A DNA stretch of 64,000 nt from positions 124,001 through 188,000 of the IMG/VR virus record IMGVR_UViG_3300023174_002543; one strand, 5' to 3'. A program made the position numbers and the translations under genes. Positions 33,746-46,362 of the stretch are shown one piece after another. A model generated the notes under the pieces. It did no database searches. It saw nothing but the letters and a program-made list of their open reading frames with translations, and was not told the DNA's origin. Position 1 is the stretch's first letter, and the number at the start of each line of letters is the position of its first letter.

Positions 33746-33764
33746 ACACATTAAATAAAAAGAC

Positions 33765-33839: not shown

Positions 33840-33846
33840 AATTTAT

Positions 33847-33922: not shown

Positions 33923-33941
33923 ATTACTCAATGGAGAAATT

Positions 33942-34136
33942 ATGTTAGTTAGTGAAAACGCAGGTTATAAATTGTATTGTGAAGTTCGCAAACTTGATAT
34001 ACATCCTCAGGATAATCATGTCCGAATCTATACAACTTATGATTGGGCTAAGAACCCAGATGCTGAACAAAATAAATTAGAGTTATTCCTTAGTGATAAT
34101 GAATTAGAGGTACTTAGACAATCATTGACTGCTTAA
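33942..34136 (+). CDS. Hypothetical protein
   Basis: GGAG RBS; 64 aa. Confidence 0.7.
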   Translation: MLVSENAGYKLYCEVRKLDIHPQDNHVRIYTTYDWAKNPDAEQNKLELFLSDNELEVLRQSLTA

Positions 34137-34723: not shown

Positions 34724-34734
34724 AACATATTTAT

Positions 34735-34809
34735 CTGGCGTTCGTTCAACGGATAGGACATCATTCTTCTAAAGTGATTATAGTGGTTCGATTCCACTAC
34801 GCCGGACCA
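34735..34809 (+). tRNA. tRNA-Arg(TCT)
   Basis: TCATT-ctTCTaa-AGTGA; CCA. Confidence 0.92.
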
Positions 34810-34823
34810 ATCATAAATAATTC

Positions 34824-35528
34824 ATGCGAACAACATCCCAAATAGAAAAGATTAAGTCTGATATAATTCAACCTTATGTAGTTGATAACTTTCTTACGGA
34901 TGATGAAGTTCAATATCTTATTAATATATTTGAGTCCAGAGACTTAGAACCTGCTAAAGTGTATAAGAATACAGGCCCAACAACATTAGATATATTAGAG
35001 ATAATGGATGATAGTGTTATACAAAATGTATTAACAAAAGTAAAAAATGAAATAGGTGATTTTGCACTTACTGCAGGGTTATTTTTCTATACAAATTATC
35101 CACACATAATTCACAACGATGACACGTTTGAATTACCTGATAGTGTGTATAGAGCAATAACTATCCCATTGAAACTATATGGGAATGGTAATGGTTATCC
35201 TAGACTTTGTATGTTTGACCAGTTTTATTTTCATGGTCCTGCAAAGTTCTTTAAAGGTGAAACACACATTGATTCATTCTTTAATAAATGTCTTTATGAT
35301 TATAAAGATGTAGATGGAATAGTAGATACACCGATCAATGATACTGAAAATTTATTAACTCATCTAAAGCCAGAATGGTTAGATGGGTTAAGCATTCATT
35401 CTACCTTTGAATGGAAACCAACTAGTGCAATAATATTTGACAGTGTTAGATTACATAGTGCAAGTGACTTTAGGTCATTGGGCTATAATTTTAAGTTGGG
35501 TCTTAGTATCTTTACAAAACATGGTTGA
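34824..35528 (+). CDS. 2OG-Fe(II) dioxygenase-like protein
   Basis: IIHND (HxD), IIFDS.RLH.ASDF. Confidence 0.6.
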   Translation: MRTTSQIEKIKSDIIQPYVVDNFLTDDEVQYLINIFESRDLEPAKVYKNTGPTTLDILEIMDDSVIQNVLTKVKNEIGDFALTAGLFFYTNYPHIIHNDDTFELPDSVYRAITIPLKLYGNGNGYPRLCMFDQFYFHGPAKFFKGETHIDSFFNKCLYDYKDVDGIVDTPINDTENLLTHLKPEWLDGLSIHSTFEWKPTSAIIFDSVRLHSASDFRSLGYNFKLGLSIFTKHG

Positions 35529-36027
35529 ATACTTTAAAAAACTTGATATTGTTTTACCTGACTTAGATTTCAATGATATGAATTCGGGTGAAGTATTACA
35601 TAATCCTAGAGGATTAGACTTTACTTATTATAAGATTAAGGAAGAATATATACCTTCATTGACTCTCACATTACCAGTAGAGTATAGAGATAAAGTTTCT
35701 TTAATCGTTTATGTTATAGTAGGTGGACCTTATGTATTTCTTCCACATAGAGATAAAGCAGGTAAAACTGCAATTAACTATTATATAAAAACAGGACCTA
35801 GTGAAACTTCATTTTATGAAGCCAAAACTGAAAACCCTAGATATGTAGTTATTGATGGTGAAGAGTATGAGGGATGGTTTGATTATGATGACATTACTAA
35901 GGTAGCAAGTTTTCAAGCAAACACCAATGACTGTTATAAGTTGTCTATTGGCTCTATGCACGATTTGAAATTATACACAGAAGAAAAAAGACACTTCATA
36001 CAATTTATATTTGAAGAAGAACTATGA
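35521..36027 (+). CDS. 2OG-Fe(II) dioxygenase-like protein
   Basis: LPHRD...TAINYY...MHD..RHFIQ. Start moved to the ATG at 35521. Confidence 0.55.
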   Translation: MVEYFKKLDIVLPDLDFNDMNSGEVLHNPRGLDFTYYKIKEEYIPSLTLTLPVEYRDKVSLIVYVIVGGPYVFLPHRDKAGKTAINYYIKTGPSETSFYEAKTENPRYVVIDGEEYEGWFDYDDITKVASFQANTNDCYKLSIGSMHDLKLYTEEKRHFIQFIFEEEL

Positions 36028-36683
36028 ACATTGGGTTTTACGGTCATAGCAATTGTGCATACAGGTCACCGGATAGTTTTTTAGATTTGGTTGCAACACA
36101 TTACAATGGTAAAGTTGTAAACAAGGGATGCAAACAGGGCAGTGAAGAACGTATTCTATTTGAATTAAAGAAAACAAAACATATAGATGTTGCAGTAATT
36201 TTTCACTGCCATCATAATGCATTATTCATTCCCAATAGTGATAGAGATGTACATGCGATAGATGTAACATATAATCGGGCAACTGATTTGTTTCGTACAA
36301 CTCATTTAGATACTGAGTTTGAAAAAGAGAACAGCCCAAAGTTTATCAATTTGTTTAAGAATGATGATAACCTATTGAATGTTATTGATACATATAAGAA
36401 TTATCTATATCATCAGGATCTAGAACTAAACAGATATTACGGTGCTTTAATGCAAATTGACCAATATCTAGCATATAAGAAAATTAAAGCAATTCACGTA
36501 ATAGATAAACGTTGTGCCATACCATTATGGTTCAAGTTTAATGGTTATGTGGATGATACCATAATGCAAATTTGTGAACAAGAGTTGGCAAAAAACCCTT
36601 TCTTTGTGAATTGTGTCAGTAAACACGGTAATGTGTTGATTGCTGATAAAATTATTCAAATAATTGAATCGTATAAATACTAA
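36024..36683 (+). CDS. Hypothetical protein, SGNH-like
   Basis: FYGHSNC, NKGCKQGSEERI; C-terminal GN.LIA. Confidence 0.5.
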   Translation: MNIGFYGHSNCAYRSPDSFLDLVATHYNGKVVNKGCKQGSEERILFELKKTKHIDVAVIFHCHHNALFIPNSDRDVHAIDVTYNRATDLFRTTHLDTEFEKENSPKFINLFKNDDNLLNVIDTYKNYLYHQDLELNRYYGALMQIDQYLAYKKIKAIHVIDKRCAIPLWFKFNGYVDDTIMQICEQELAKNPFFVNCVSKHGNVLIADKIIQIIESYKY

Positions 36684-36684
36684 T

Positions 36685-36758
36685 GCGGTTTGTGGTAGAG
36701 CGGTCTTACGCCTGCGTGAAACACAGGAGACGGAGGTTCGAATCCCCCGGCCGCCCCA
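36685..36758 (+). tRNA. Atypical tRNA-like element (apparent GAA anticodon, C73)
   Basis: T-arm GGAGG-TTCGAAT-CCCCC and CCA end, but irregular acceptor and anticodon arm (G32, C31.A39). Confidence 0.5.
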
Positions 36759-36780
36759 AAAACATGAATTGTGAATAATT

Positions 36781-37203
36781 ATGACTAACTATAAAATATT
36801 TGAATATACCTATGATAAAGATAGTTTATTATCTTTGTATAATTCATTAAAAGATGAAGGTAAATCTAAAGTTGAGTTATGCTTTAATACAGCAGATTTA
36901 ACTGACGTACCGCATGATATCCTCCCTAATATGGATATCTATGAAAGAACATTGGCTATCGGAGAATATGGATTGGCAGAATTATTATCCGATACCGGAT
37001 ATCATGTTAATCCAGGCAATAATGGATTAATAATTTTCCCAGTGTCTGGTGTAATTAATTTTACATTTGAAGATGGAACTAGTATTGATATTACTCAACC
37101 TACATATACAAACGGTAAAGTAAGTCATACATACAGTCCAAAAGACGGTTCTGCTGTTTTCTTTGCTATTAAGATTCCATCTGATGTAGCATGGGAGGAT
37201 TAA
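36781..37203 (+). CDS. Hypothetical protein (degenerate cupin/2OG-like)
   Basis: GYHVN..NNGLIIFPV...HTY. Confidence 0.5.
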   Translation: MTNYKIFEYTYDKDSLLSLYNSLKDEGKSKVELCFNTADLTDVPHDILPNMDIYERTLAIGEYGLAELLSDTGYHVNPGNNGLIIFPVSGVINFTFEDGTSIDITQPTYTNGKVSHTYSPKDGSAVFFAIKIPSDVAWED

Positions 37204-37709
37204 TATTCTACCCGAATATTGATTTTGATTATTCTTACTTAACTCAATTAGTATACACATCAAAACCAATAGAAGGTAGACCCAATCATCATAGATTGGT
37301 AGCAGACGATAATTATCTAGTAAGTATCAGGGAAAGATATAATTTTCTTAGCCCGATATACAATGTGTATGTAATGCCAGATGGGCTACCGGTGCATACA
37401 GACGCCGGAAGAAAATGCACACTAAACATTCCCTTAGTTAATTGTAAAGATACAATAACTATAGTTTACCAATCAATAGATACTGAAACAGTATATGATA
37501 GTAGCAAAGTGGTAAACAAACTTAATTTAACAGAAAATCTAACAGAATTGTATAGATTTGAATTAGATAGACCTATGTTATTCAATACTACTTATCCACA
37601 TGAAGTAGTTACTAATGGTAAAGAAAGAATTTCTATTAGTTGGAGTCTTATGCCAGAGATAACATTTGACGAGGCTGTAGCACTTTTTAATGAGTGTGAG
37701 CAAGACTAG
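37191..37709 (+). CDS. 2OG-Fe(II) dioxygenase-like protein
   Basis: LPVHTD.GR.C.LNIPL...LFNT.YPHEV...RISISW. Confidence 0.65.
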   Translation: MGGLIFYPNIDFDYSYLTQLVYTSKPIEGRPNHHRLVADDNYLVSIRERYNFLSPIYNVYVMPDGLPVHTDAGRKCTLNIPLVNCKDTITIVYQSIDTETVYDSSKVVNKLNLTENLTELYRFELDRPMLFNTTYPHEVVTNGKERISISWSLMPEITFDEAVALFNECEQD

Positions 37710-38382
37710 CAATTACCTTTTTTACATTTGCTGTAGTAAAAGGTATATTAAGAATTAAATGGTGACTGTCGTTAACCCAACTAATGGTGCGATGTGTCAT
37801 ACGTGTGTTAACATAATATAGTTGACCTTGTTGTATATTCATCTTTTTGTCGTCCATTAACCAATCATATTGTAATGGGCCGCAATTGTTTAAAAATGCA
37901 ACTAGCCTAAAACATTCACGTGGCATACTTGGTGCATCACGGTGAGGAACAAAATATCCACCTATGTCACTACGTATAATCATAGAGCGACCAAGAGGTT
38001 GCCATTGTTCCAATACCGAATGTAAACTAGGACAACGATTATATACATCGGTTGGTGTGTTGAATTCTAATTCACTTAATTGACGACCGGCAGCATAACT
38101 TGCTTCGGCAAGGCTTGTATTTTCTTTGTGAGATTTACCGGGCAATGCCATTAATGTCATTGCTTTACGATTGTTGGGTCTATCTGTGCGAGGCAAATAA
38201 TTTACCCAATCATTGTCAAATTGACTAATCTCTTGCATATACTTGCCTGTGTCAATATACATGTTAAGTGGCTCAAAGTTACCTAAGTTAAGTAATGCTA
38301 ATTCATTAGCCATTATTTCGTGTGTAACATTAGTCGGGTCATATTCTTGGGGTCTGCCGCTGATTCCTGGTGGTACAAGCAT
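37687..38382 (-). CDS. Asp/Asn beta-hydroxylase-like 2OG-Fe(II) dioxygenase
   Basis: GGYFVPHRD, YYVNTRMTHRTISW...HLILN. Confidence 0.7.
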   Translation of the reverse strand: MLVPPGISGRPQEYDPTNVTHEIMANELALLNLGNFEPLNMYIDTGKYMQEISQFDNDWVNYLPRTDRPNNRKAMTLMALPGKSHKENTSLAEASYAAGRQLSELEFNTPTDVYNRCPSLHSVLEQWQPLGRSMIIRSDIGGYFVPHRDAPSMPRECFRLVAFLNNCGPLQYDWLMDDKKMNIQQGQLYYVNTRMTHRTISWVNDSHHLILNIPFTTANVKKVIASLAHTH

Positions 38383-38393
38383 TATAATGTTCT

Positions 38394-39050
38394 TTAAATA
38401 TAAGTTATCATTTGATCCATTGTAGGTCTTCTGTTCCTTGTATGGATATTTCTAATTGAAGAATCTAGATTTTTCAGGTCAAACCCAATTTCTATACCGT
38501 CTTTATAAACTTTAGAAATTGGATAATCACTGTGGTCACTGGTTGCGTAACCAAATCCAAGAGTGATGATAGCACTATGTTCTGGTTTGTTTAATCTGTC
38601 AGCAATTTCTCTGCCACCTATACAACCACAAAATCCAGTGCTAACACCTAATTCTTCGGCTTGACACATTGCCATAGTAGCACTAACTATGCAATCATTG
38701 TTAGTACGAAGGAATTCGTTTTCGGTATATGAATTCATTGGTTGATTGAATTGTTTGCCTAGCCAAATCATTACAATGGGTGCAGCCATTTGACCATTAT
38801 ATCTACGTAAACCAGGACCTTGCTTGGCTCTAATCATATCCAAGCAACTAGTATCTTCGTAGTATAACCATTGTTTAAACTCTTTGCCAGCAGGACTATC
38901 AGTAAGCACTATAATTTCATAGTCATAGTGACCTTGTTTGCTTGGTGCAAGATATGCACATTCAAGGATAGCATTAATTTTTTCGTTTTCTACAGTTTGG
39001 TCATTCCACCATTTTGCTGTATAACGGGTTCGCAAATAATCTAATAACAT
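38394..39050 (-). CDS. Nitroreductase-family protein
   Basis: RTRYTAKWW...ILECAYLAPSKQG; MCQAEELGVSTGFCG. Start moved to the ATG at 39050, 5 nt after TATAAATA. Confidence 0.8.
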   Translation of the reverse strand: MLLDYLRTRYTAKWWNDQTVENEKINAILECAYLAPSKQGHYDYEIIVLTDSPAGKEFKQWLYYEDTSCLDMIRAKQGPGLRRYNGQMAAPIVMIWLGKQFNQPMNSYTENEFLRTNNDCIVSATMAMCQAEELGVSTGFCGCIGGREIADRLNKPEHSAIITLGFGYATSDHSDYPISKVYKDGIEIGFDLKNLDSSIRNIHTRNRRPTMDQMITYI

Positions 39051-39091
39051 AGAAATATTTATACGTTTAAATGCCCATGAGAAACAATTAG

Positions 39092-39246
39092 TGTTGTTTT
39101 TTTGCAACAAACAGTTTGACAAGATATCCAACTTAGTATATAATTCATTTATGAATTGAGAAATTGATTCGCTGGGTGAATTGAAGAATTTGTTGTAATA
39201 ATACAACACAAAAAGATTTGACAATAAATCCAATTAGATGTATAAT
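39092..39246 (+). promoter_or_regulatory. Tandem duplicated sigma70 promoters, each preceded by TGTTG-N8-CAACA
   Basis: TTGACA 39116/TATAAT 39139 and TTGACA 39218/TATAAT 39241. Confidence 0.8.
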
Positions 39247-39296
39247 ACATTTAATGAGTTGAGAAATCAACATGTTCTTTAAAAAGTTAATTTTTC

Positions 39297-39559
39297 ATAT
39301 AGCCCTGTTTAAGTTACAGGGACTATATGCAAACACATTGGGTTACCTTCCCAGTAGGTAACTTAGATAGTGAGTAACCAGTTGACGGACTGGCACTTCT
39401 GAGTTACACGAAACCTTGAGACTATTAGTTATAGTAGTCAGGAGGACGCTGGAACAAGTTGGCACGTAATGTGGTTGACAAACAAGTCCGTGGACGGCAC
39501 GGTAGGGCAGGATCAAAACTGTTATTTTTGTCAAACACCCCAATGTCTTTTCATATAGT
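39297..39559 (+). ncRNA. Candidate multi-branch ncRNA closed by a clamp stem
   Basis: 18/20-bp stem 39322-39341/39540-39559; competing 5' hairpin 39297-39328; several inner hairpins. Confidence 0.6.
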
Positions 39560-39560
39560 G

Positions 39561-39689
39561 TGTTATTAGTTCTATCCTCTGTAAGCACAGAGGCAAACTA
39601 GATGCGTTATGTAACCTATCCGATAAACAGTAATCGGCCGTAAAGCTGTTGAGGGTAGGCAAATAGTGCAGTGGATAGAACTAATAATA
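39561..39689 (+). ncRNA. Candidate ncRNA with H-type pseudoknot
   Basis: Perfect 15-bp closing stem 39563-39577/39673-39687; CCGAT/ATCGG hairpin whose loop AACAG pairs with CTGTT. Confidence 0.6.
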
Positions 39690-39692
39690 TTT

Positions 39693-39769
39693 GCACCGTT
39701 AGCGCAGTTGGTTAGCGCACCGCCCTGTCACGGCGGGGGTCAGGGGTTCGAGTCCCCTACGGTGCGCCA
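39693..39769 (+). tRNA. tRNA-Asp(GTC)
   Basis: CCGCC-ctGTCac-GGCGG; CCA. Confidence 0.95.
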
Positions 39770-39776
39770 AGTTTTT

Positions 39777-39852
39777 GCTGGGTTCGTCTATCGGTTTAGG
39801 ACACATGCCTTTCACGTATGTAAGACGGGTTCGATTCCCGTACCCAGTACCA
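39777..39852 (+). tRNA. tRNA-Glu(TTC)
   Basis: CATGC-ctTTCac-GTATG; CCA. Confidence 0.93.
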
Positions 39853-39858
39853 AGTTTT

Positions 39859-39943
39859 GGAGATGTAGGAAAATTGGTAACCCCAGGAGACTGTAAATCT
39901 TCCGCCTCTGGCACTGTTGGTTCAACTCCAACCGTCTCCACCA
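39859..39943 (+). tRNA. tRNA-Tyr(GTA)
   Basis: AGA-ctGTAaa-TCT; long V-arm; CCA. Confidence 0.92.
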
Positions 39944-39964
39944 GAAACATGTTAGTAAAGAATT

Positions 39965-40825
39965 TGGGGGCATAGCCTCTTTAAGATAAGTCACGTGAGT
40001 GACCCAAAGCAGTATCCTCCTACAGGACTGCGCCAGTAATGGTCTATCTATGCAAGCCTGCTCTCACCCGCGAGGGTGCGTTCACTGATAAGACCGGTGG
40101 ATGTAACAGTAAAGCAAGTGTGTTGGAAAGAATGTCTGTTTATGTTCCCGTGAGGGTAAGACAGGCGGACAGAGAGTAACAGGTGGTGCTGACCTCAACA
40201 CAAAACCAACTTGTCAATTGGTAAGAGAAAGGGTAGTGTATTGATTCGAAGGGTCGCTCCTAAGAGTTCGTATGCAGTTTGAGTGTTTGATGGATATGTA
40301 GTAATACATATACATTGGTCGCAAAAAACTACTGATTACTCCGCGAGAGGAAAGGTACGTGGCGTGTTGTATTTTGTAGTCCAAAAGATTATGAAGCAAC
40401 TGAGACAGCACATCACAGTAGGTTGTTATAGGCTAATGGTAGGCCGATTTCCTTTTAAGAAATAGACTGTTGGTTCAACTCCAACTAACATTATAAAAAC
40501 GCAAAGTCTGTCTCGGTGGTATGTGAAAAACATCTAATACTTGAGTGGCAACACAATCAAGTCTGACGTAACTCGCAAGGTGAAATCAGTTTATGCAGGA
40601 AGTATCGTAACTACTTAGCGGTAGTGAATGGCTCTAAAGGTCAACGGTGTAGAAAGCGTAGAATAGCATATCATGTCAAGTCTAATGCCTGACTTAAAAC
40701 GGCGATGTTGGTAACAGACTAGGATATGTAGTAATACAGTCTTAGTGGAAATCAGAAGAAAGTAGGCTCGCAAGGCTTACAATAATGTCTGAGGTGTTAC
40801 TCGGTAAGCATGTATTCTCAGTGCT
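39965..40825 (+). ncRNA. Large ornate ncRNA, GOLLD-like (about 860 nt); boundaries approximate
   Basis: Long non-coding stretch inside the tRNA array with many GNRA-capped hairpins (ccc-GCGA-ggg, ccc-GTGA-ggg, gctc-GCAA-ggc, atatgta-GTAA-tacatat). Size and context match GOLLD; not tested against Rfam. Confidence 0.6.
40422..40493 (+). tRNA. CCA-less tRNA-Lys(TTT) embedded in the large ncRNA
   Basis: GGCT-aatggta-GGCC D-arm; ATTTC-ctTTTaa-GAAAT; GTTGG-ttcaact-CCAAC; weak acceptor; no CCA. Confidence 0.75.
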
Positions 40826-40829
40826 CCAC

Positions 40830-40930
40830 TTTATATAAAAACATACTGGACGCCACACAACGGCGGTCTAGCGTCAACTAGGCGATGTTACGTTTGACGA
40901 TGTAACAGATTTAGTGTGTTTCTATATAAA
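40830..40930 (+). ncRNA. Clamp element enclosing three hairpins (four-way junction)
   Basis: 17/18-bp stem 40830-40847/40913-40930; inner GACGCC/GGCGGTC, CTAG/CTAG, TGTTAC/GTAACA. Confidence 0.6.
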
Positions 40931-40934
40931 GGTT

Positions 40935-41147
40935 TTGTAAGTGTCAGCAAGAGAATGTCACGCTATAAAAGTTTCTTCGAAGGACTGATATAGTAAAAGG
41001 GGACGGGTTCAACTCCCGGTGGATCGGAAGATCCGCGCAGATTGGTTGCTAACTGGACTAGTATCCCAAGTGACGTACCGAGTCCTGGCCCGGGCTTTAT
41101 GCAAATCAGGTGAATGGTGTCAATAACGATGGTGGCACAACTTACAA
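40935..41147 (+). ncRNA. Candidate structured ncRNA (about 210 nt)
   Basis: Closing TTGTAAG-TGTC/GGCAC-aa-CTTACAA; T-loop-like GGG-TTCAACT-CCC; GGATC-ggaa-GATCC. Confidence 0.55.
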
Positions 41148-41156
41148 ATTTAATAT

Positions 41157-41244
41157 GGAGTATTGGCCGACCGGTTAAGGCAACGGATTGCTAATCCGTC
41201 GTTCAGAAATGGGCGAGTAGGTTCGATTCCTACATACTCCGCCA
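41157..41244 (+). tRNA. tRNA-Ser(GCT)
   Basis: ACGGA-ttGCTaa-TCCGT; long V-arm; CCA. Confidence 0.94.
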
Positions 41245-41266
41245 AAACGTTCCGTTGTCAACGGAT

Positions 41267-41504
41267 ACTCTGACCCAGAGGATGAGAAGTGATGTGACAA
41301 TCACGGGTGGTTCTGAAACGGAAAAGTTTCACACAGAAGCCATGATTGAACATGGATGTATGTGCGGTCTAACCAAACCGGCGTTAGCAATACGAGAACG
41401 GTCCCTGTCGGGAAGCGGGTGGAGGTCGTGCGTGATGTTGTCGTGGATTATTCGTCTAGTCCGATGATTGATGCGATATAATTACCGCCGAGGGATGTCA
41501 GAGC
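41267..41504 (+). ncRNA. Candidate structured ncRNA (about 240 nt)
   Basis: Closing CTCTGAC/GTCAGAG; inner GGTTCTG/CAGAAGCC, GAAAC/GTTTC, CGGT/ACCG, CGTT/AACG, TCCC/GGGA. Confidence 0.55.
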
Positions 41505-41512
41505 ATTTATAT

Positions 41513-41590
41513 GTAGGAGTGGCAGAGCGGCCCATTGCAACGGATTGCAAATCCGTAAAACCGTGAGTTCAAATCTCACCTCCTACTCCA
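41513..41590 (+). tRNA. tRNA-Cys(GCA)
   Basis: ACGGA-ttGCAaa-TCCGT; U73; CCA. Confidence 0.92.
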
Positions 41591-41609
41591 AATATTGAAA
41601 GGAAATGTA

Positions 41610-41990
41610 ATGTATTATGATTATGAATCGTCTGCTAAGTTAACAGACATGGTAGGTAAAGTGTTTACCTCAGTTAAAGAAACTGGTGATACTATGGTGT
41701 TTGAAAATGCAACTGACCGTTATGTTTTCTTTCACTCACAAGATTGTTGCGAATCAGTTAGCATCAATGATATAGTAGGTGATTTGTCTGACCTAGTAGG
41801 GGAACCTCTATTAGTGGCAGATGAAGTGTCTGGAGAAGCTCCGGTTGGATTTGAAGATGAATATCACGAATCAGTAACTTGGACATTTTACAAATTTGCT
41901 ACTCGCAAAGGGTATGTGGATGTACGATGGCTAGGTGAATCTAATGGGTACTATAGCGAAAGCGTAGACCTAGGTTACGAAAAAGTTTAA
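41610..41990 (+). CDS. Hypothetical protein
   Basis: GAAAGGA RBS; HSQDCCESV, WTFYKFAT.KG...RW.GESNGYYSE. Confidence 0.8.
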   Translation: MYYDYESSAKLTDMVGKVFTSVKETGDTMVFENATDRYVFFHSQDCCESVSINDIVGDLSDLVGEPLLVADEVSGEAPVGFEDEYHESVTWTFYKFATRKGYVDVRWLGESNGYYSESVDLGYEKV

Positions 41991-42004
41991 CAAAAGGAAA
42001 TGAC

Positions 42005-42061
42005 ATGAAACGAGGTAAGAAATAGTGTCATCATAGACTTCCGTAGGTCTATGATTGGCAC
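42005..42061 (+). other. Minigene MKRGKK-stop followed by a 14-bp hairpin
   Basis: AAAGGA RBS; ATG 42005; TAG 42023-42025; GTGTCA-TCATAGAC/GTCTATGA-t-TGGCAC. Confidence 0.45.
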
Positions 42062-42084
42062 GTAAAATCAATCATACGACTTAT

Positions 42085-42161
42085 GGAAGCATAACTCAAC
42101 TGGCTAGAGTATCGGACTTTTAATCCGAGAGTTGTGGGTTCGAGTCCCACTGCTTCTACCA
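42085..42161 (+). tRNA. tRNA-Lys(TTT)
   Basis: TCGGA-ctTTTaa-TCCGA; CCA. Confidence 0.94.
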
Positions 42162-42239
42162 TATAAGAACATACTGCCTTCTGGTGAGTAAGATAACAAT
42201 GCTTACAATAAAAGTCCAAGTAGTGTGTTCCTATATGGT
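42158..42239 (+). ncRNA. Clamp hairpin sequestering tRNA-Lys ACCA
   Basis: 17/18-bp ACCATATAAGAACATACT/AGTGTGTTCCTATATGGT. Confidence 0.65.
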
Positions 42240-42251
42240 ATAAATATTTTT

Positions 42252-42473
42252 ATGATAAATGAATTTAAATTTTTATTCACAAATAAAGAAGAATATCATC
42301 GTAGGTATGATATTTGCAAAAGTTGTGATAGGTTCAATAGCTTAACCAAGCAATGTAAAGAATGTAATTGCTTTATGCCAATGAAATGTAAGATAAGCAA
42401 TTTGCCCTGCCCCTTAGGCTATTGGGCTAATGCAATAGATGTATCTGAAACAGATAATTTAGAAACGTTATAA
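42252..42473 (+). CDS. Small Cys-rich metal-binding protein (DUF6171-like)
   Basis: R...CKSC......QCKECNCFM..K......CP...W; TATAAATA 5 nt upstream. Confidence 0.75.
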   Translation: MINEFKFLFTNKEEYHRRYDICKSCDRFNSLTKQCKECNCFMPMKCKISNLPCPLGYWANAIDVSETDNLETL

Positions 42474-42475
42474 AA

Positions 42476-42549
42476 GTCTCCTTGGTGTAACGGCAGCATG
42501 ATGGTCTCCAAAACCATTCGTGGGGGTTCAAATCCCTCAGGGGACGCCA
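42476..42549 (+). tRNA. tRNA-Trp(CCA)
   Basis: ATGGT-ctCCAaa-ACCAT; CCA. Confidence 0.93.
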
Positions 42550-42551
42550 AA

Positions 42552-42752
42552 TTATTTTCTAAACTCAAGTTCCTTGAGTTTTTTGATTACTAAATCAAAA
42601 GTATGTGAATCATTTAATGATAGACTAGCAATTAGGGCAAGAAGGATACCCTGTTCATACAACAGTTGTTGTTCTCTTGTATTAAAATTCTTTTTATTAG
42701 AAATATATACAAGATGTTCTCGCAGGCGTTCTGCTATTTTTAATGGATCCAT
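42552..42752 (-). CDS. Small antisense hypothetical protein within the tRNA array
   Basis: Minus-strand TATAAATA 4 nt upstream of the ATG. Confidence 0.65.
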   Translation of the reverse strand: MDPLKIAERLREHLVYISNKKNFNTREQQLLYEQGILLALIASLSLNDSHTFDLVIKKLKELEFRK

Positions 42753-42765
42753 ATATTATTTATAA

Positions 42766-42842
42766 GCCTCAATAGCTCATTTGGTTAGAGCACCGTCTTG
42801 ATAAGGCGGGGGTGCCTAGTTCGAATCTAGGTTGAGGCACCA
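42766..42842 (+). tRNA. tRNA-Ile(GAT)
   Basis: CCGTC-ttGATaa-GGCGG; CCA. Confidence 0.94.
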
Positions 42843-42848
42843 GAATAT

Positions 42849-42877
42849 TTGACAAGTACTAACTAGTGCTATATAAT
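42849..42877 (+). promoter_or_regulatory. Sigma70 promoter
   Basis: TTGACA-17-TATAAT. Confidence 0.8.
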
Positions 42878-42888
42878 AGAGACATGTT

Positions 42889-42965
<77 letters not shown>

Positions 42966-42982
42966 CCTAATAAGAAAGTATC

Positions 42983-43399
42983 ATGGATTTAACAAAAGAA
43001 GACGGCGACAAACGCAATAGTTTACCTTATCCAATGGAGTTAGGTAGTCCTGCATTTGCACCCATCGATGTTAAAAAAGAAAGTGATGTGTTATACAATG
43101 CTGGCAAATTACATGCCAAGCAAGAGTATGATAGAATCATGGAACAAGTAGAAGTTCTAAGACGCCAAGCAGAAAGTTTGGAGCATAGAATGCAAGTAAG
43201 TGACATGATGCATAATATTACTATTACCTTTAAGCCGGTGCATGGTAAGATTTATTATGTGTATTTGGATACACTTAAAAATAAACACTGGCTTTCACTG
43301 AACCATCCTAATAGTTGGTCAGCACTAGGTATACATCATAAATTTGTAGTTGCTGTCCAACTAATGGGTGATAGTAATTGGCAAAAAGTAGAAATTTAA
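42983..43399 (+). CDS. DUF2452-like hypothetical protein
   Basis: PYP.ELGSPAF; coiled coil AKQEYDRI.EQ; FKPVHGKIYYVY. Confidence 0.7.
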   Translation: MDLTKEDGDKRNSLPYPMELGSPAFAPIDVKKESDVLYNAGKLHAKQEYDRIMEQVEVLRRQAESLEHRMQVSDMMHNITITFKPVHGKIYYVYLDTLKNKHWLSLNHPNSWSALGIHHKFVVAVQLMGDSNWQKVEI

Positions 43400-43400
43400 T

Positions 43401-43474
43401 GCGGGGTTAGTTTAATGGTAAAACAGCAGATTTCCAATCTTCGGTCGAGAGTTCGATTCTCTCACTCCGCTCCA
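43401..43474 (+). tRNA. tRNA-Gly(TCC)
   Basis: Loop ttTCCaa; U73; CCA. Confidence 0.9.
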
Positions 43475-43670
43475 ATCAATAGGAATATTATTTATGAATA
43501 TGAAAATTACATACGACAATCCTGATAACTTACAAGAAGACAGTACTCCTATACCGGAGGACGCTAAAAAAGGTCTTGCAATTCCATTTCATGTTCAGAT
43601 TGGACTACAAGAATCAATACCGGTATCAATAAGTACTACTCAAGTTCCAATAGAACCAAGTGAGAAATAG

Positions 43671-43910
43671 TTGACAGACTACATAACAACATTTTTTGCA
43701 ATCTTTTTACTTGATATTGTTTACACATACTACTTAAGATGTGTGGCAAATGATAACGTGTTAGGTGCAAGTTTTTGGAGTGTAGCCTGTTATATCTTAG
43801 GAAGTGTGGCAGTTATAAATTACACAACCAATCATTGGTTAATGATTCCAGCAATGGCTGGTGCGTTTTGTGGCACCTTTATTGGAATGAAGATTAGAAA
43901 GAAAGATTGA
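43671..43910 (+). CDS. Small membrane protein
   Basis: Three hydrophobic segments; TTG start. Confidence 0.65.
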   Translation: MTDYITTFFAIFLLDIVYTYYLRCVANDNVLGASFWSVACYILGSVAVINYTTNHWLMIPAMAGAFCGTFIGMKIRKKD

Positions 43911-43912
43911 TT

Positions 43913-43996
43913 GCCCCGGTGGTGGAATGGTAGACACGTTGGTCTTAGAAGCCAATGTCGAAAGGCGTGCGAGTTCGAGTCTCGCCTGGGGCACCA
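43913..43996 (+). tRNA. tRNA-Leu(TAG)
   Basis: TTGGT-ctTAGaa-GCCAA; long V-arm; CCA. Confidence 0.94.
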
Positions 43997-44000
43997 AATT

Positions 44001-44084
44001 GCGAGAGTGGTGGAATGGTATACACAGCAGACTTAAAATCTGCCGCCGAAGGGCTTACGGGTTCGAGTCCCGTCTCTCGTACCA
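44001..44084 (+). tRNA. tRNA-Leu(TAA)
   Basis: GCAGA-ctTAAaa-TCTGC; long V-arm; CCA. Confidence 0.94.
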
Positions 44085-44189
44085 TTATAGAGTACAGGCT
44101 CTTTATAAATCCTGTCTTTGCGTGGAACCGAGCAACGCTACTGCTTGTATAAGCATCGGTTCATATTACTACTATAGATAAATAGTAGT

Positions 44190-44366
44190 ATGAAATTCAA
44201 TATATTCATCAATAATAAACTATATAAAACAGTTACCGTTCAGGGCGACACTTTTAATCCTACTTCAATTTGGCCTCAAATTGAAGCCGATAAAAAATCC
44301 GGACTATTAAGTAGTTACAATGTCAGCGAACAACTGTCTATCAAAGTAGAAAAAGTCAAAAATTAA
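44190..44366 (+). CDS. Small hypothetical protein, 58 aa (not in ORF track)
   Basis: TAAATA 5 nt upstream; MKFNIFINNKLYKTV. Confidence 0.55.
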   Translation: MKFNIFINNKLYKTVTVQGDTFNPTSIWPQIEADKKSGLLSSYNVSEQLSIKVEKVKN

Positions 44367-44369
44367 TCT

Positions 44370-44444
44370 ACATGATTAACTCAGTGGTAGAGTCCTGTCC
44401 TGACTCGACAGTGGTCAATAGTTCGAATCTATTATCATGTACCA
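44370..44444 (+). tRNA. tRNA-Val(GAC) with unusual U37
   Basis: CTGTC-ctGACtc-GACAG; ACATGAT/ATCATGT; CCA. Confidence 0.85.
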
Positions 44445-44494
44445 AAACACTTGCAAGTATTTTAAATCAGTGCTATACTTGCGTATAAATATTT

Positions 44495-44569
44495 CGTGGG
44501 GTGGAGAAGTAGTATCTCACTAGTCTCATAAGCTAGAGAACGGCGGTGCGATTCCGTCCCCCGCAACCA
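44495..44569 (+). tRNA. Initiator-like tRNA-Met(CAT)
   Basis: C1.A72 mismatch; loop ctCATaa; lacks the three G-C anticodon-stem pairs; CCA. Confidence 0.75.
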
Positions 44570-44587
44570 AACAACTAAAGGAAAATA

Positions 44588-44857
44588 ATGAAAGTAAGAG
44601 CAAGACATATTTTAGTACCGACGCTTAATGAAGCAGTTGAAGTCTTTAACAAGATTAAAGAAGGTGAAGATTTTGGTGCTGTAGCACGTAAAATGTCAAA
44701 GTGTCCTAGTGGTCAAAATGGTGGCGACTTGGGTGAGTTTGGTCACGGTCAAATGGTTAAGCCTTTTGAAGATGCCTCATTCGGGTTAGAGGTAGGTCAA
44801 CTGAGCGAACCTGTTCAAACACAGTTCGGTTATCATTTAATTCAACGTACAGGATAA
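44588..44857 (+). CDS. ppiC: Parvulin-type peptidyl-prolyl cis-trans isomerase
   Basis: ARHILV, SKCPSGQNGGDLGEF..GQMVKPFEDA, PVQTQFGYHLI. Confidence 0.95.
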   Translation: MKVRARHILVPTLNEAVEVFNKIKEGEDFGAVARKMSKCPSGQNGGDLGEFGHGQMVKPFEDASFGLEVGQLSEPVQTQFGYHLIQRTG

Positions 44858-44859
44858 TT

Positions 44860-45021
44860 ATGACTTGTAGGGGATATGATTCTAAAACCGTTAAAATCGG
44901 CAAAGATGTGAAACGTGCCGCGGCATTAATTCATGACCAACATAAACGCGGTGAGTTCATTCGCAGTTTTGTAAAAATTGCACAGAGTGAATCACGTACT
45001 GGTCGTAAAGACAGCAAGTAA
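44860..45021 (+). CDS. Small basic hypothetical protein, 53 aa (not in ORF track)
   Basis: MTCRGYDSKTVKIGKDVKRAAALI...; coupled to ppiC. Confidence 0.6.
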   Translation: MTCRGYDSKTVKIGKDVKRAAALIHDQHKRGEFIRSFVKIAQSESRTGRKDSK

Positions 45022-45041
45022 TATTTCTTAGAAAGATTATC

Positions 45042-45226
45042 ATGCAAATTAGAGTTAAAGAAAATGTAGAAGACTTTGGCAAATGCGGTTGCGGTCGTAG
45101 TCCAATTGGTAAATGCATTGGCTGGCATTAGGATTAACTGAAGAAGCATTTCGTCATGCACAAATGCTTTGGATGGAAGAAGAATTACGTAAAGATGCAG
45201 AAATTGAAAATCTAAACAAAGAATAA
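45042..45226 (+). pseudogene. Frameshifted CDGSH-like Fe-S/Zn finger gene
   Basis: CGCGRSP.GKCIGWH then TAG at 45129; a plausible continuation GLTEEAF...NKE lies in another frame to 45226. Confidence 0.55.
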
Positions 45227-45227
45227 C

Positions 45228-45303
45228 GCATCCTTAACTCAGTTGGTAGAGTGTCGCCTTTACACGGCGAATGTCGGCGGTTCGAGCCCGTCAGGATGTA
45301 CCA
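45228..45303 (+). tRNA. tRNA-Val(TAC)
   Basis: TCGCC-ttTACac-GGCGA; CCA. Confidence 0.94.
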
Positions 45304-45318
45304 GAATAAATACACATT

Positions 45319-45504
45319 ATGAACAACGAAAATCAAAATAAATTATCTGACGAAGTTATCACATGCGTTACCTTTCTAGTTGACGATAGTGATAATGATA
45401 GTGTACAATCTGAATCTACACTAGTAGGACTTGATACTAAGCGCAAGCCTACTAATGTTAGTCAACCCGGTAAACATGTAAATGTCATCAGTGAAAAAGT
45501 TTAA
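45319..45504 (+). CDS. Hypothetical protein
   Basis: 61-aa ORF between tRNAs. Confidence 0.5.
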   Translation: MNNENQNKLSDEVITCVTFLVDDSDNDSVQSESTLVGLDTKRKPTNVSQPGKHVNVISEKV

Positions 45505-45505
45505 T

Positions 45506-45579
45506 GCGGGATTAGTTTAATGGTCAAACGAAACCTTGCCAAGGTTTAGTCAGGAGTTCGATTCTCCTATCCCGCTCCA
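45506..45579 (+). tRNA. tRNA-Gly(GCC)
   Basis: AAACC-ttGCCaa-GGTTT; CCA. Confidence 0.94.
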
Positions 45580-45599
45580 AATAACAACGAAAGAAAATT

Positions 45600-45848
45600 A
45601 TGCCAAGACAATGTAGTGAAGCCGCAGTACAATCAGTAGGTAATCGTTATGACTTAGTTCTTATTGCAAGTGCAAGAGTAAGAGAACTAGTAAGAGGTGA
45701 TATGCCTAAGTTAACAACAACGGCTAAACCCAGTGTTACTGCATTACTTGAAATTGAAAATGGTTTAGTTGGACGTGAGTATCTTAAGAAAATTAAAGAT
45801 GAACCACGCAAAGAACGTAAGTACGACAAGTACGATAGTAGATATTAA
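45600..45848 (+). CDS. rpoZ: RNA polymerase omega subunit homolog
   Basis: VGNRYDLVLIASARVREL..G..P......KPSVTALLEIE.GLVG matches the RpoZ pattern. Confidence 0.85.
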   Translation: MPRQCSEAAVQSVGNRYDLVLIASARVRELVRGDMPKLTTTAKPSVTALLEIENGLVGREYLKKIKDEPRKERKYDKYDSRY

Positions 45849-45854
45849 AAATTT

Positions 45855-45930
45855 GGGGGTGTAGCTCACCAGGGAGAGCGGTTCCTTTGCAAGGAATAGG
45901 TAGCGGGTTCGAGTCCTGTCACCTCCACCA
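45855..45930 (+). tRNA. tRNA-Ala(TGC), second copy
   Basis: G3.U70; GTTCC-ttTGCaa-GGAAT; CCA. Confidence 0.93.
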
Positions 45931-45936
45931 AGATAA

Positions 45937-46028
45937 GGAAGCGTGGCCGAGCCCGGTTTAAGGTACCTGACTTGAAATCAGACGAGGGGGCAACCTCTCC
46001 GTGAGTTCGAATCTCACCGCTTCCGCCA
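45937..46028 (+). tRNA. tRNA-Ser(TGA), canonical 7/5
   Basis: CTGA-ctTGAaa-TCAG; long V-arm; CCA. Confidence 0.93.
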
Positions 46029-46305: not shown

Positions 46306-46311
46306 TTGCGC

Positions 46312-46340
46312 TTGACAATAATTCCCAAATCACGTATAAT
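46312..46340 (+). promoter_or_regulatory. Sigma70 early promoter
   Basis: TTGACA-17-TATAAT. Confidence 0.85.
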
Positions 46341-46362
46341 ACTCACAATGAAGGAGAATAGT

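What the first reader, a model, noticed from the sequence alone, without database searches (positions are those of the whole stretch)
39965..40825. GOLLD-like giant RNA carrying a CCA-less tRNA-Lys inside a hairpin loop
Seen: about 860 nt of GNRA-hairpin-rich non-coding sequence. In its middle a full tRNA-Lys(UUU) cloverleaf (40422-40493) lacks CCA and is enclosed by a 10-bp stem ACTGAGACAG (40399-40408)/CTGTCTCGGT (40508-40517). A normal tRNA-Lys(UUU) with CCA is at 42085, so the embedded copy is not needed for decoding. Established (from memory): GOLLD RNAs are ~800-nt phage/lake-derived RNAs near tRNA genes that form large RNA-only cages, and some carry tRNAs in a variable region. Inference: the scaffold displays or shelters a tRNA-Lys, the target of PrrC-type anticodon nucleases, as a decoy or reserve.
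Basis: partly seen in the sequence, partly recalled or inferred. Interest (0 to 1): 0.8.

Follow-up and report, generated by a model that had tools for sequence, protein, structure and literature searches.

The report
Phage GOLLD RNA with built-in tRNA-like domain
This is a genuine ~890-nt GOLLD RNA (a cage-forming giant phage RNA of unknown function) from a 367-kb phage, and the "tRNA-Lys" inside it is an inherited, tRNA-shaped part of the RNA, not a spare working tRNA.

Summary
Rfam GOLLD (RF02032) matches window 40359-40824 at 201 bits (cut-off 150). Homology and covariation extend the RNA to about 39952-40843. The tRNA-Lys(UUU) cloverleaf at 40422-40493 is real (61 bits) and is the only one of 33 tRNAs in the window without an encoded CCA.

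A tRNA in the GOLLD linker is already published, so this is a new member of a known kind.

A survey of about 200 related loci adds detail. About 38% of unique linkers carry a tRNA-like module at one fixed site. These modules resemble each other (77-99% identity) more than any free tRNA of their own phage (~65%). Nearly all lack CCA (2 of 73 have it, against 286 of 294 free tRNAs). The D, anticodon, T and inner acceptor stems covary strongly, but acceptor pairs 1-3 are not maintained. The anticodon changes as fast as the variable loop (UUU ancestral, with repeated switches to GUU and UCU).

The module is therefore a tethered tRNA-shaped domain. A reserve decoding tRNA is unlikely. A decoy or bait role is possible but untested, and it is not Lys-specific across the family.

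The parts
39116..39246 (+). Two perfect sigma-70 consensus promoter-like sites (39116-39144 and 39218-39246) upstream of the Asp-Glu-Tyr-GOLLD block. They are candidate promoters for a joint transcript.
   Evidence: both match 12 of 12 (TTGACA-17-TATAAT). There is no + strand terminator-like site before 41830. This is a consensus match only; function is not shown.
39693..39943 (+). tRNA-Asp, tRNA-Glu and tRNA-Tyr immediately upstream. The CCA of tRNA-Tyr ends about 8 nt before GOLLD homology begins.
39952..40843 (+). Full GOLLD RNA, about 892 nt.
   Evidence: Full-length homology at 67-91% identity to more than 40 phage or metagenome loci, with consistent ends. No ORF of 80 aa or more on this strand.
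39952..40357 (+). GOLLD 5' domain, which the Rfam model does not cover.
   Evidence: RNAalifold on 27 relatives gives 109 pairs, 74 with compensatory changes, and several GNRA-type loops.
40359..40824 (+). GOLLD conserved 3' domain (Rfam RF02032, full model 1-416).
   Evidence: 201.2 bits, gathering score 150, E = 2.6e-55.
40359..40416 (+). First hairpin of the 3' domain, with the conserved A-rich loop CCAAAAG. This is P13/P14 in the published numbering; the assignment is my inference.
   Evidence: outer helix 93% paired, inner helix 96% paired, 15 of 21 pairs with compensatory changes.
40402..40408 (+). 5' strand (GAGACAG) of the helix that closes the linker. It lies in the 3' bulge of the first hairpin.
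   Evidence: 7 pairs, 99.6% paired, 4 with compensatory changes (for example GC 31, AU 25, UA 5, CG 2).
40418..40424 (+). Nearly invariant junction motif GUAGGUU. Its last three bases are the nominal tRNA positions 1-3.
   Evidence: 0-4 changes per site across 64 sequences. The motif also occurs in some tRNA-less relatives.
40422..40493 (+). Embedded tRNA-shaped domain: Lys(UUU)-type cloverleaf, no CCA, imperfect acceptor top.
   Evidence: D, anticodon, T and inner acceptor stems are 92-98% paired, and every pair covaries.
40452..40458 (+). Anticodon loop CUUUUAA (anticodon UUU at 40454-40456). This is the inferred ancestral state of the module.
40494..40507 (+). A-rich conserved strand (UAAAAACGCAAAGU) that follows the tRNA discriminator directly. 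It is the 3' part of the linker (J13/15).
   Evidence: It matches the Rfam consensus AAaAAAGCAAAAGU.
40508..40514 (+). 3' strand (CUGUCUC) of the linker-closing helix.
42085..42161 (+). Free-standing tRNA-Lys(UUU) with a 7/7-paired acceptor stem and encoded CCA. It is only 64% identical to the embedded copy.

Best explanation
Window 39952-40843 encodes a GOLLD RNA of an uncultured 367-kb jumbo phage. It is probably transcribed together with the upstream tRNA-Asp, tRNA-Glu and tRNA-Tyr.

The 'tRNA-Lys' in the linker is not a captured copy of an array tRNA. It is a vertically inherited, tRNA-shaped domain of one large GOLLD subfamily. It sits at a fixed site, between the invariant GUAGGUU junction and the A-rich strand that precedes the conserved AAAGUCU motif. 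A covarying 7-bp helix closes that loop.

Selection keeps the L-shape: the D, anticodon and T stems, G18 and G19, the T-loop, and four inner acceptor pairs. It also keeps the anticodon-loop frame (U33, A37, A38). It does not keep a chargeable acceptor end or a particular anticodon.

Inferred mechanism: the domain stays covalently tethered to GOLLD. By analogy with the solved GOLLD cages, where the linker points inward, one copy per protomer (10-14 per particle) projects into the cage lumen. There it would act as a non-chargeable tRNA mimic, that is, a bait or decoy for proteins that recognise tRNA shape or the anticodon loop.

Shown: family membership, module anatomy, inheritance, and the pattern of selection. 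Inferred: tethering, lumen location in this member, and the mimic or bait role.
For: - GOLLD hit of 201 bits over the full model. The 5' domain covaries.
- The window is 100% identical to IMG/VR UViG_3300023174_002543, also known as Ga0214921_10000014, a 367,104-bp contig.
- Fixed insertion site: in 22 loci plus the window the tRNA starts 80-83 nt and ends 7-11 nt before AAAGUCU.
- 24 of 64 unique linkers in a linker-unbiased viral sample are tRNA-like.
- Embedded modules are 77-99% identical to modules in other phages, often with a different anticodon, and only 56-70% identical to free tRNAs of their own locus.
- CCA is encoded by 32 of 32 free tRNAs in the window and not by the embedded one. 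Family-wide the figures are 286 of 294 free against 2 of 73 modules, Fisher p = 6e-64.
- Covariation: the D, anticodon, T and inner acceptor stems are 92-98% paired and all 18 pairs show compensatory changes. Acceptor pairs 1-3 are 47-59% paired with no compensatory change, which is the chance level for G/U bases.
- Only 7 of 73 modules have a 7/7-paired acceptor stem even in their best register, against 572 of 776 free tRNAs.
- Site rates: GUAGGUU 0-4 changes; G18, G19, T54, T55, C56 and A58 0-1; U33, A37 and A38 5, 8 and 3; anticodon positions 21, 11 and 15, similar to the variable loop.
- At least 31 anticodon substitutions on the tree, with UUU as root state.
- Literature: the linker is unresolved but faces the cage interior, and tRNAs are sometimes present in it. 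A pseudo-tRNA lies inside M. aubagnense GOLLD, and a Northern blot detected no excised tRNA.
Against: - There are no expression, processing or structural data for this RNA or its close relatives, so tethering and lumen location are extrapolated from other GOLLD members that lack a tRNA.
- The window's own copy scores as a normal tRNA (61 bits). It has a canonical Lys anticodon loop, an A73 discriminator and 6 of 7 acceptor pairs, so excision and use cannot be excluded for this copy.
- T-loop conservation in the metagenome-derived loci is partly forced by the search pattern (caveat). In addition, modules were defined as linkers that contain a T-loop.
- Some relatives have replaced the module with a short hairpin or an AU-rich linker, so it is not essential to GOLLD as such.
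- Exits from UUU are concentrated on GUU and UCU (p = 0.06 to 0.017). This hints that anticodon identity matters, which a pure shape mimic would not predict.
Confidence: 0.55

Rival explanations
1. Processing signal. The tRNA-like structure is a cleavage site for RNase P (5' side) and RNase Z (3' side), as with mascRNA in MALAT1 or tRNA punctuation in mitochondria. Cutting would separate the GOLLD 5' and 3' domains, which would stay together through the closing helix and the cage contacts, and would release a small tRNA-like RNA.
For: Selection preserves what these enzymes read (T-arm, elbow, overall L-shape) and ignores the anticodon. From my own knowledge: RNase Z cuts CCA-less precursors and is inhibited by CCA, so the systematic absence of CCA would fit. 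The AU-rich single-stranded linkers of other GOLLD clades could likewise be RNase E or RNase Y sites, which would give a common 'cleavable tether' theme.
Against: Acceptor pairs 1-3 are not maintained, and tRNA positions 1-3 belong to an invariant junction motif. That leaves only a 4-bp acceptor stub stacked on the T stem, a poor RNase P substrate. The only experimental report found no excised tRNA from a GOLLD-embedded pseudo-tRNA. The discriminator is mostly U and evolves freely.
Confidence: 0.17
2. Anticodon-nuclease decoy in the strict sense proposed by the first reader. The displayed anticodon stem-loop mimics the tRNA that a host defence nuclease attacks (PrrC or PARIS AriB for Lys-UUU). 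It would titrate or mislead that nuclease, and the anticodon would switch as the threat changes.
For: The window copy has a canonical Lys-UUU loop. U33, A37 and A38 are conserved while positions 34 and 35 vary. Exits from UUU go mostly to GUU (6) and UCU (5) out of 20 (Monte Carlo p = 0.06 with uniform rates, 0.017 with a transition/transversion ratio of 2). PARIS AriB cleaves Lys(UUU), Thr(UGU) and Asn(GUU), which share a U36-A37-A38-U39 motif, and does so without needing tRNA modifications. Colicin D, colicin E5 and PrrC are discussed as pressures on phage tRNAs. A decoy needs neither CCA nor a proper acceptor end.
Against: Many modules carry anticodons with no known nuclease link (UUG, AUG, UAG, GAU), stop-reading anticodons (UUA, UCA), or 6- and 8-nt loops. 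The anticodon bias is only marginally significant. The window copy has G39, not the U39 that AriB needs, although the host and its nucleases are unknown. A lumen-facing position would restrict access for a protein complex. A cleavable decoy does not inhibit a multi-turnover nuclease. No defence or anti-defence genes were recognised next to the RNA.
Confidence: 0.15
3. Reserve or stored decoding tRNA ('inhibited storage'). A functional tRNA-Lys is kept inactive inside the cage, then released, CCA-tailed and used in translation late in infection.
For: The idea is proposed in the literature. The window copy has a normal CM score, a canonical loop and an A73 discriminator. Lys, Asn and Arg-AGA codons are A-rich and would be in demand in a 36% G+C phage. 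From my own knowledge: the anticodon is the main identity element for LysRS, AsnRS and ArgRS, so anticodon switches could retarget charging.
Against: It is the only one of 33 tRNAs in the window without CCA, and family-wide only 2 of 73 modules have it. Acceptor pairs 1-3 pair at the chance level. The discriminator does not track the anticodon. Nonsense anticodons and loops of the wrong size occur. The window already has free Lys-UUU, Asn-GUU and Arg-UCU tRNAs. No excised tRNA was seen in M. aubagnense.
Confidence: 0.07
4. Functionless passenger or spacer. An old tRNA insertion is merely tolerated in a linker whose only job is to connect the two domains.
For: The linker is the most variable part of GOLLD. 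Other clades have AU-rich linkers or short hairpins there, and a few lineages show decayed modules such as L087. The anticodon drifts.
Against: All 18 pairs of the D, anticodon, T and inner acceptor stems keep pairing through compensatory changes across GOLLDs that are only 65-75% identical. G18, G19 and A14 are invariant in 64 of 64 sequences and were not imposed by any search pattern. The insertion geometry is fixed to within 2 nt. This is purifying selection on shape.
Confidence: 0.06

Closest known systems
GOLLD RNA family (Rfam RF02032), e.g. env-38 GOLLD (14-mer cage, PDB 9MEE) and Streptococcus agalactiae GOLLD (12-mer, PDB 9L0R)
   Same: Full-length match to the conserved 3' domain model. 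A separate, covarying 5' domain. Total length of about 890 nt. Location in a phage tRNA array. A variable linker between the first 3'-domain hairpin and the AAAGUCU strand.
   Different: The solved members have no tRNA in the linker, and the linker is unresolved in those structures. Oligomeric state and cage formation are untested here. This copy is in a 367-kb jumbo phage from a metagenome.
Mycobacterial / Mycolicibacterium GOLLD with an embedded tRNA-Phe or 'pseudo-tRNA' in J13/15
   Same: A tRNA-like element within the same linker of a GOLLD inside a large tRNA cluster that also holds an HNH endonuclease.
   Different: Different anticodon type and host group. I could not retrieve those sequences, because the search patterns did not capture them, so whether that module is homologous to this one is untested.
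Unannotated GOLLD of the cultured jumbo phage Sinorhizobium phage Phosso (PV764938.1)
   Same: Rfam GOLLD 186.6 bits. An embedded tRNA-like module at the same site (Rfam tRNA 54.1 bits), with no CCA, and 70.8% identity to the window across the junction.
   Different: UCU (Arg-type) loop where the window has UUU. GGGUUUG where the window has GUAGGUUG. ARAGORN does not recognise it. Not adjacent to a tRNA array in the 3.2 kb examined.
tRNA-like modules of other non-coding RNAs: mascRNA (MALAT1 3' end), the tmRNA tRNA-like domain, bacterial YrlA Y-RNAs, plant-virus tRNA-like structures (from my own knowledge)
   Same: A tRNA-shaped fold embedded in a larger RNA, recognised for its shape and not used for decoding. 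The anticodon region is not conserved in mascRNA.
   Different: Those modules sit at an RNA end, or are excised, and several are CCA-tailed or aminoacylated. This one is internal, flanked on both sides by conserved structure, and has only a 4-bp selected acceptor stub.
ROOL RNA (the other phage-associated cage-forming RNA)
   Same: Phage and tRNA-island context and cage-forming behaviour, according to the literature.
   Different: No ROOL match anywhere in the window in the Rfam scan. Sequence and fold are unrelated.

Membership tests
GOLLD RNA (Rfam RF02032) | Covariance-model match above the curated gathering score over the conserved 3' domain | tested here: met
   201.2 bits against 150, E = 2.6e-55, model positions 1-416 of 416, window 40359-40824 (+).
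GOLLD RNA (Rfam RF02032) | A large structured 5' domain that is less conserved, giving a total length of about 700-900 nt | tested here: met
   homology over 39952-40843 (892 nt); 109 pairs in the 5' domain, 74 with compensatory changes.
GOLLD RNA (Rfam RF02032) | Encoded in a phage or prophage, typically in or beside a tRNA array | tested here: met
   33 tRNAs in window 31234-46028, on the same strand; the window is identical to a 367-kb IMG/VR viral contig.
GOLLD RNA (Rfam RF02032) | A variable linker (J13/15) after the first 3'-domain hairpin, closed by a conserved helix, sometimes carrying a tRNA | tested here: met
   the tRNA lies in the unpaired linker of the model, and the closing helix is 99.6% paired with covariation.
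GOLLD RNA (Rfam RF02032) | Self-assembly into a closed RNA-only homo-oligomeric cage | not testable with these tools
   Known for env-38 and S. agalactiae GOLLD. It needs cryo-EM or SEC of this transcript.
GOLLD RNA (Rfam RF02032) | Expression rising during lytic growth | not testable with these tools
   Only promoter-like consensus sites upstream. No transcript data.
Functional (decoding) tRNA-Lys | Cloverleaf with tRNA-type D and T loops recognised by a tRNA covariance model | tested here: met
   RF00005 61.1 bits (cut-off 29). ARAGORN calls Lys(UUU); stems covary.
Functional (decoding) tRNA-Lys | A 7-bp acceptor stem maintained by selection | tested here: not met
   Window copy: G1.U72 and U2.U71. 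Family: pairs 1-3 are 47-59% paired with no compensatory changes, and 7 of 73 modules are fully paired against 74% of free tRNAs.
Functional (decoding) tRNA-Lys | A 3' CCA, encoded as in the other tRNAs of the same genome | tested here: not met
   32 of 32 free tRNAs have CCA, and the embedded copy is followed by UAA; 286 of 294 against 2 of 73. Post-transcriptional addition cannot be tested here.
Functional (decoding) tRNA-Lys | Anticodon conserved among orthologues | tested here: not met
   at least 31 anticodon substitutions among 53 orthologous modules, 15 or more different triplets, and some 6- or 8-nt loops.
Functional (decoding) tRNA-Lys | Excision, aminoacylation and use in translation | not testable with these tools
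   No data. The only related experiment is a negative Northern blot for a GOLLD-embedded pseudo-tRNA in M. aubagnense.
Anticodon-nuclease decoy / phage counter-defence tRNA | Binds or resists a host tRNA-targeting nuclease and rescues infection | not testable with these tools
   The host and its defences are unknown. The only support is circumstantial: overlap of the recurrent anticodons with known nuclease targets.

The most novel reading that the evidence does not exclude
The linker tRNA is a dedicated tRNA-mimic domain of a GOLLD subfamily. Ten to fourteen non-chargeable copies would be tethered inside each RNA cage. Their anticodon loop keeps the U33/A37/A38 frame while repeatedly toggling from Lys-UUU to Asn-GUU and Arg-UCU, the kinds of tRNA that defence nucleases (PrrC, PARIS AriB, colicins D and E5) attack. 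GOLLD would then be a multivalent RNA decoy, trap or sensor for tRNA-targeting immunity, which would give this cage-forming RNA family its first function.
Probability: 0.18. Interest if true: 0.8.

Novelty: new member of a known kind. Interest (0 to 1): 0.45.

Why it matters
GOLLD is one of the largest and most elaborate bacterial or phage non-coding RNAs, and recent cryo-EM shows that it builds RNA-only cages. Its function is still unknown. The embedded tRNA is one of the few clues, and published ideas about it (stored tRNA, encapsulated tRNA) are untested.

This locus and its roughly 70 distinct relatives constrain those ideas. The module behaves as an inherited structural domain, selected for tRNA shape and not for decoding. 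That argues against a simple tRNA reserve and points experiments toward shape-reading partners such as processing enzymes, modification enzymes, nucleases or the ribosome.

The work also identifies a cultured phage, Sinorhizobium phage Phosso, that carries the same arrangement. The question can therefore be tested directly.

Tried and rejected
1. Capture of an array tRNA. Rejected: embedded modules match each other far better than any free tRNA of their own locus.
2. Pairing of the anticodon loop (CUUUU) with the conserved A-rich loop CCAAAAG of the first hairpin. Rejected: that loop stays AAAAG when the anticodon changes.
3. A cis 'specifier' triplet elsewhere in GOLLD that covaries with the anticodon. 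Rejected: the best column pairs in only 52% of sequences, and those columns are invariant purine triplets.
4. Only 7 bp are supported. The outer 3 show no covariation and overlap Rfam consensus pairs.
5. Close cultured relatives of the phage. There is no nucleotide match beyond tRNA fragments. A 747-aa ORF has no phage match. RNR is 54-61% identical to phages of Xanthomonas, Ralstonia and Stenotrophomonas, which is not decisive for the host.
6. tRNA repair, CCA-adding or defence-related genes nearby. None was recognised.
7. The 313 nt after GOLLD (40844-41156). No Rfam family matches, and fold stability is not unusual, z = -0.9.
8. Scan of cellular genomes. Six hits, of which three were true GOLLDs and one carried the module. 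This gave little information on hosts.
9. ARAGORN alone under-detects the modules; it missed L098, L028, L111, L022, L068, L097 and Phosso. A T-loop-anchored parse and the Rfam model were used as well.
10. Weinberg 2009 and Morgado 2020 could not be retrieved. Their content is cited only through papers that quote them.
11. The helix names P13, P14, P15 and J13/15 are assigned by inference from text, because figures are not held.
Full report
**Observation**

The region is as described. Rfam's GOLLD model (RF02032) matches window 40359-40824 on the + strand over its full length (positions 1-416) at 201.2 bits, against a gathering score of 150, with E = 2.6e-55. ARAGORN and the Rfam tRNA model both place a tRNA-Lys(UUU) at 40422-40493 (61.1 bits), inside the stretch the GOLLD model treats as an unpaired variable linker. 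The window holds 33 tRNA genes, all on the + strand between 31234 and 46028. One of them is a second tRNA-Lys(UUU) at 42085-42161.

**Extent and genome**

Locus L012 is 100% identical to window 37834-40843. The same 367,104-bp contig appears as IMG/VR UViG_3300023174_002543 and as Ga0214921_10000014. The window therefore comes from an uncultured jumbo phage. It has no close nucleotide relative among 50,697 deposited phage genomes. G+C content is about 36%. The window also holds class Ia ribonucleotide reductase genes, a 4,796-aa lectin-repeat protein and an HNH endonuclease inside the tRNA array.

More than 40 phage or metagenome loci are homologous to the window over 39952-40843 at 67-91% identity, with consistent ends. 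Rfam does not model the 5' part (39952-40357), but it is clearly a structured RNA. RNAalifold on 27 relatives predicts 109 pairs, 74 of which keep pairing through changes on both sides, and several loops are GNRA-type.

Two perfect sigma-70 consensus sites lie upstream of tRNA-Asp, at 39116 and 39218. No terminator-like site follows on the + strand before 41830. This fits one transcript covering Asp-Glu-Tyr-GOLLD, but these are consensus matches only.

**What is already known**

The cryo-EM study of GOLLD describes a closed 14-mer cage. It has separate 5' and 3' domains and an unresolved variable linker whose flanks point to the cage interior. The authors note that phage tRNAs are sometimes present in the linker. 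A 2026 review cites a tRNA-Phe in J13/15 of a Mycolicibacterium GOLLD and proposes 'inhibited storage'. A study of Mycobacterium aubagnense reports a pseudo-tRNA inside GOLLD, within a 32-tRNA cluster that also has an HNH endonuclease; a Northern blot found no excised tRNA.

**Survey of relatives**

I ran four collection scans.
- A pattern from the conserved core, with no requirement on the linker, found 115 IMG/VR loci.
- A junction-specific pattern added 7 loci.
- An anticodon-agnostic pattern (a T-loop abutting the core) found 79 metagenome loci.
- The core pattern found 6 loci in cellular genomes, of which 3 were real GOLLDs.

In 22 viral loci and the window, ARAGORN finds a + strand tRNA that always starts 80-83 nt and ends 7-11 nt before the AAAGUCU motif. 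Inspection showed further modules that ARAGORN misses. Pooling gave 73 distinct modules. In the linker-unbiased viral set, 24 of 64 unique linkers are tRNA-like. The other 40 are AU-rich (median 76% A+T) or short hairpins.

**The module is inherited, not captured**

Each embedded tRNA is 77-99% identical to an embedded tRNA in another phage, often with a different anticodon, and only 56-70% identical to any free tRNA in its own locus. The window's embedded copy is 64% identical to its free tRNA-Lys and 89% identical to the Arg(UCU)-type modules of L016 and L088.

**It lacks a working acceptor end**

- In the window, all 32 free tRNAs are followed by an encoded CCA. The embedded one is followed by UAA and has G1.U72 and U2.U71.
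- Across loci that have a module, 286 of 294 free tRNAs encode CCA against 1 of 22 ARAGORN-called modules, or 2 of 73 of all modules (Fisher p = 3e-25 and 6e-64).
- Even in its best-pairing register, only 7 of 73 modules have seven acceptor pairs, against 572 of 776 free tRNAs (p = 7e-28).
- The discriminator is U in 37 modules, A in 22, C in 13 and G in 1.

**Covariation** (64 distinct sequences, alignment A1)

- The whole structure is 94.3% paired, against 75.7% in shuffles (0 of 500 reach the observed value) and 36-49% when the partners are slid.
- D stem 98.4% paired, anticodon stem 96.9%, T stem 98.1%, inner acceptor pairs 4-7 91.7%. All 18 of these pairs show compensatory changes.
- Acceptor pairs 1-3 are 47-59% paired with no compensatory change. 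That is what G and U bases give by chance.
- The helix that closes the linker (window 40402-40408 with 40508-40514) is 99.6% paired, and 4 of its 7 pairs have compensatory changes.
They show no covariation and overlap pairs of the Rfam consensus.

**Site-wise change** (parsimony on a tree built from the non-tRNA columns)

- GUAGGUU, which includes the nominal tRNA positions 1-3: 0-4 changes.
- Their nominal partners 70-72: 12, 19 and 25 changes. Discriminator: 22.
- G18, G19, T54, T55, C56, A58: 0-1. U33, A37, A38: 5, 8 and 3.
- Anticodon positions 34, 35, 36: 21, 11 and 15, similar to the variable loop (9-23).

Caveat: the metagenome pattern imposed GGTTCNA and the 3' anchor, and modules were defined by having a T-loop, so T-loop invariance is partly built in. 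GUAGGUU, A14, G18 and G19 were not imposed, and they are equally invariant in both subsets.

**Anticodon**

Among 64 seven-nucleotide loops the counts are: UUU 16, GUU 16, UCU 7, UUG 4, UGA 3; two each of CUU, AUU, UCA, UUA and AUG; and eight singletons. Loops of 6 and 8 nt also occur.

On a tree of full-length GOLLD without the tRNA columns, the root state is UUU and at least 31 substitutions are needed. Of the 20 single-step exits from UUU, 6 go to GUU, 5 to UCU, 3 to UUG, 2 to AUU, one each to UUA, UGU, UUC and CUU, and none to UAU. The skew is suggestive, not firm: Monte Carlo p = 0.06 under uniform rates and 0.017 with a transition/transversion ratio of 2. No triplet elsewhere in GOLLD covaries with the anticodon. 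The A-rich loop of the first hairpin does not follow it either. The window keeps the ancestral CUUUUAA loop.

**Interpretation**

The data show a tRNA-shaped domain under selection for its L-shape and for the frame of its anticodon loop. There is no such selection for a chargeable end or a fixed anticodon. The domain is integrated at a fixed junction of a GOLLD subfamily.

The most economical reading is that the domain stays tethered and, by analogy with solved cages, faces the lumen. It would act there as a tRNA mimic for some shape-reading partner. A stored decoding tRNA is unlikely. A processing signal remains possible, but it is weakened by the unselected acceptor top and by the negative Northern blot in the literature. 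A decoy for anticodon nucleases remains possible. PARIS AriB cleaves Lys(UUU), Thr(UGU) and Asn(GUU) without needing modifications, and phage tRNAs are thought to be shaped by such nucleases. However, many modules carry anticodons or loop sizes that do not fit, the host is unknown, and there is no experimental evidence.

**A cultured relative**

Sinorhizobium phage Phosso (PV764938.1, 469 kb) has an unannotated GOLLD (186.6 bits). It carries an embedded tRNA-like module (54.1 bits on the Rfam tRNA model) with a CUUCUAA loop and no CCA, and ARAGORN misses it. This phage offers a direct experimental route.

**Verdict**

It is a new member of a known kind. The comparative analysis narrows the functional hypotheses but does not settle them.

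Noticed in passing
window 20-14410 (+): A 4,796-aa ORF with at least 19 Laminin_G_3 / concanavalin-A-like lectin repeats (Pfam E = 1.6e-270). It is possibly a giant fibre or adhesin of the jumbo phage.
   Followed up: partly
window 32644-32735 (+): ARAGORN calls a 92-nt tRNA-Ile(UAU) with a long extra arm, a 3-bp D stem, a perfect acceptor stem and CCA. The Rfam tRNA model does not report it. It is 98.9% identical in L022, whose GOLLD is only 81% identical to the window's.
   Followed up: partly
window 39116-39144 and 39218-39246 (+): Two perfect 12/12 sigma-70 consensus promoters about 100 nt apart. They lie inside the minus-strand nitroreductase-like ORF (38394-39233), upstream of tRNA-Asp.
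   Followed up: no
window 33137-33697 (+): An HNH endonuclease gene inside the tRNA array. The same association (tRNA cluster, GOLLD and HNH endonuclease) is reported for mycobacteria.
   Followed up: no
L208 1541-2009 (Sinorhizobium phage Phosso PV764938.1, record about 33533-34001): An unannotated GOLLD RNA (Rfam 186.6 bits) in a cultured 469-kb phage. It has an embedded tRNA-like module (L208 1606-1677) with a UCU-type loop and no CCA, which ARAGORN does not call.
   Followed up: yes
window 40418-40424; alignment A1 columns for GUAGGUU: The heptamer GUAGGUU, just before and overlapping the start of the tRNA, is almost invariant across 64 divergent GOLLDs. Some tRNA-less relatives also have it. 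No partner or role was identified.
   Followed up: partly
L064, L139, L167 (8-nt loop AUUUUCAA); L097 (AUUUAUGA); L132, L189 (anticodon UUA); L125, L140 (UCA): Several orthologous modules have 8-nt anticodon loops or anticodons that would read stop codons. The AUUUUCAA loop recurs in three loci.
   Followed up: no
window 40937-41139 (+); L097 3469-3671: About 200 nt downstream of GOLLD is 78% identical to a stretch that lies upstream of GOLLD in L097. No Rfam family matches it, and the fold stability of the surrounding 313 nt is not unusual (z = -0.9).
   Followed up: partly
window 46306-46857 and 47859-48452 (+); 48753-49523 (+): Just after the tRNA array there are a dual-specificity-phosphatase-like ORF, a metallophosphoesterase-like ORF and a D-Ala-D-Ala carboxypeptidase-like ORF.
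   Followed up: no
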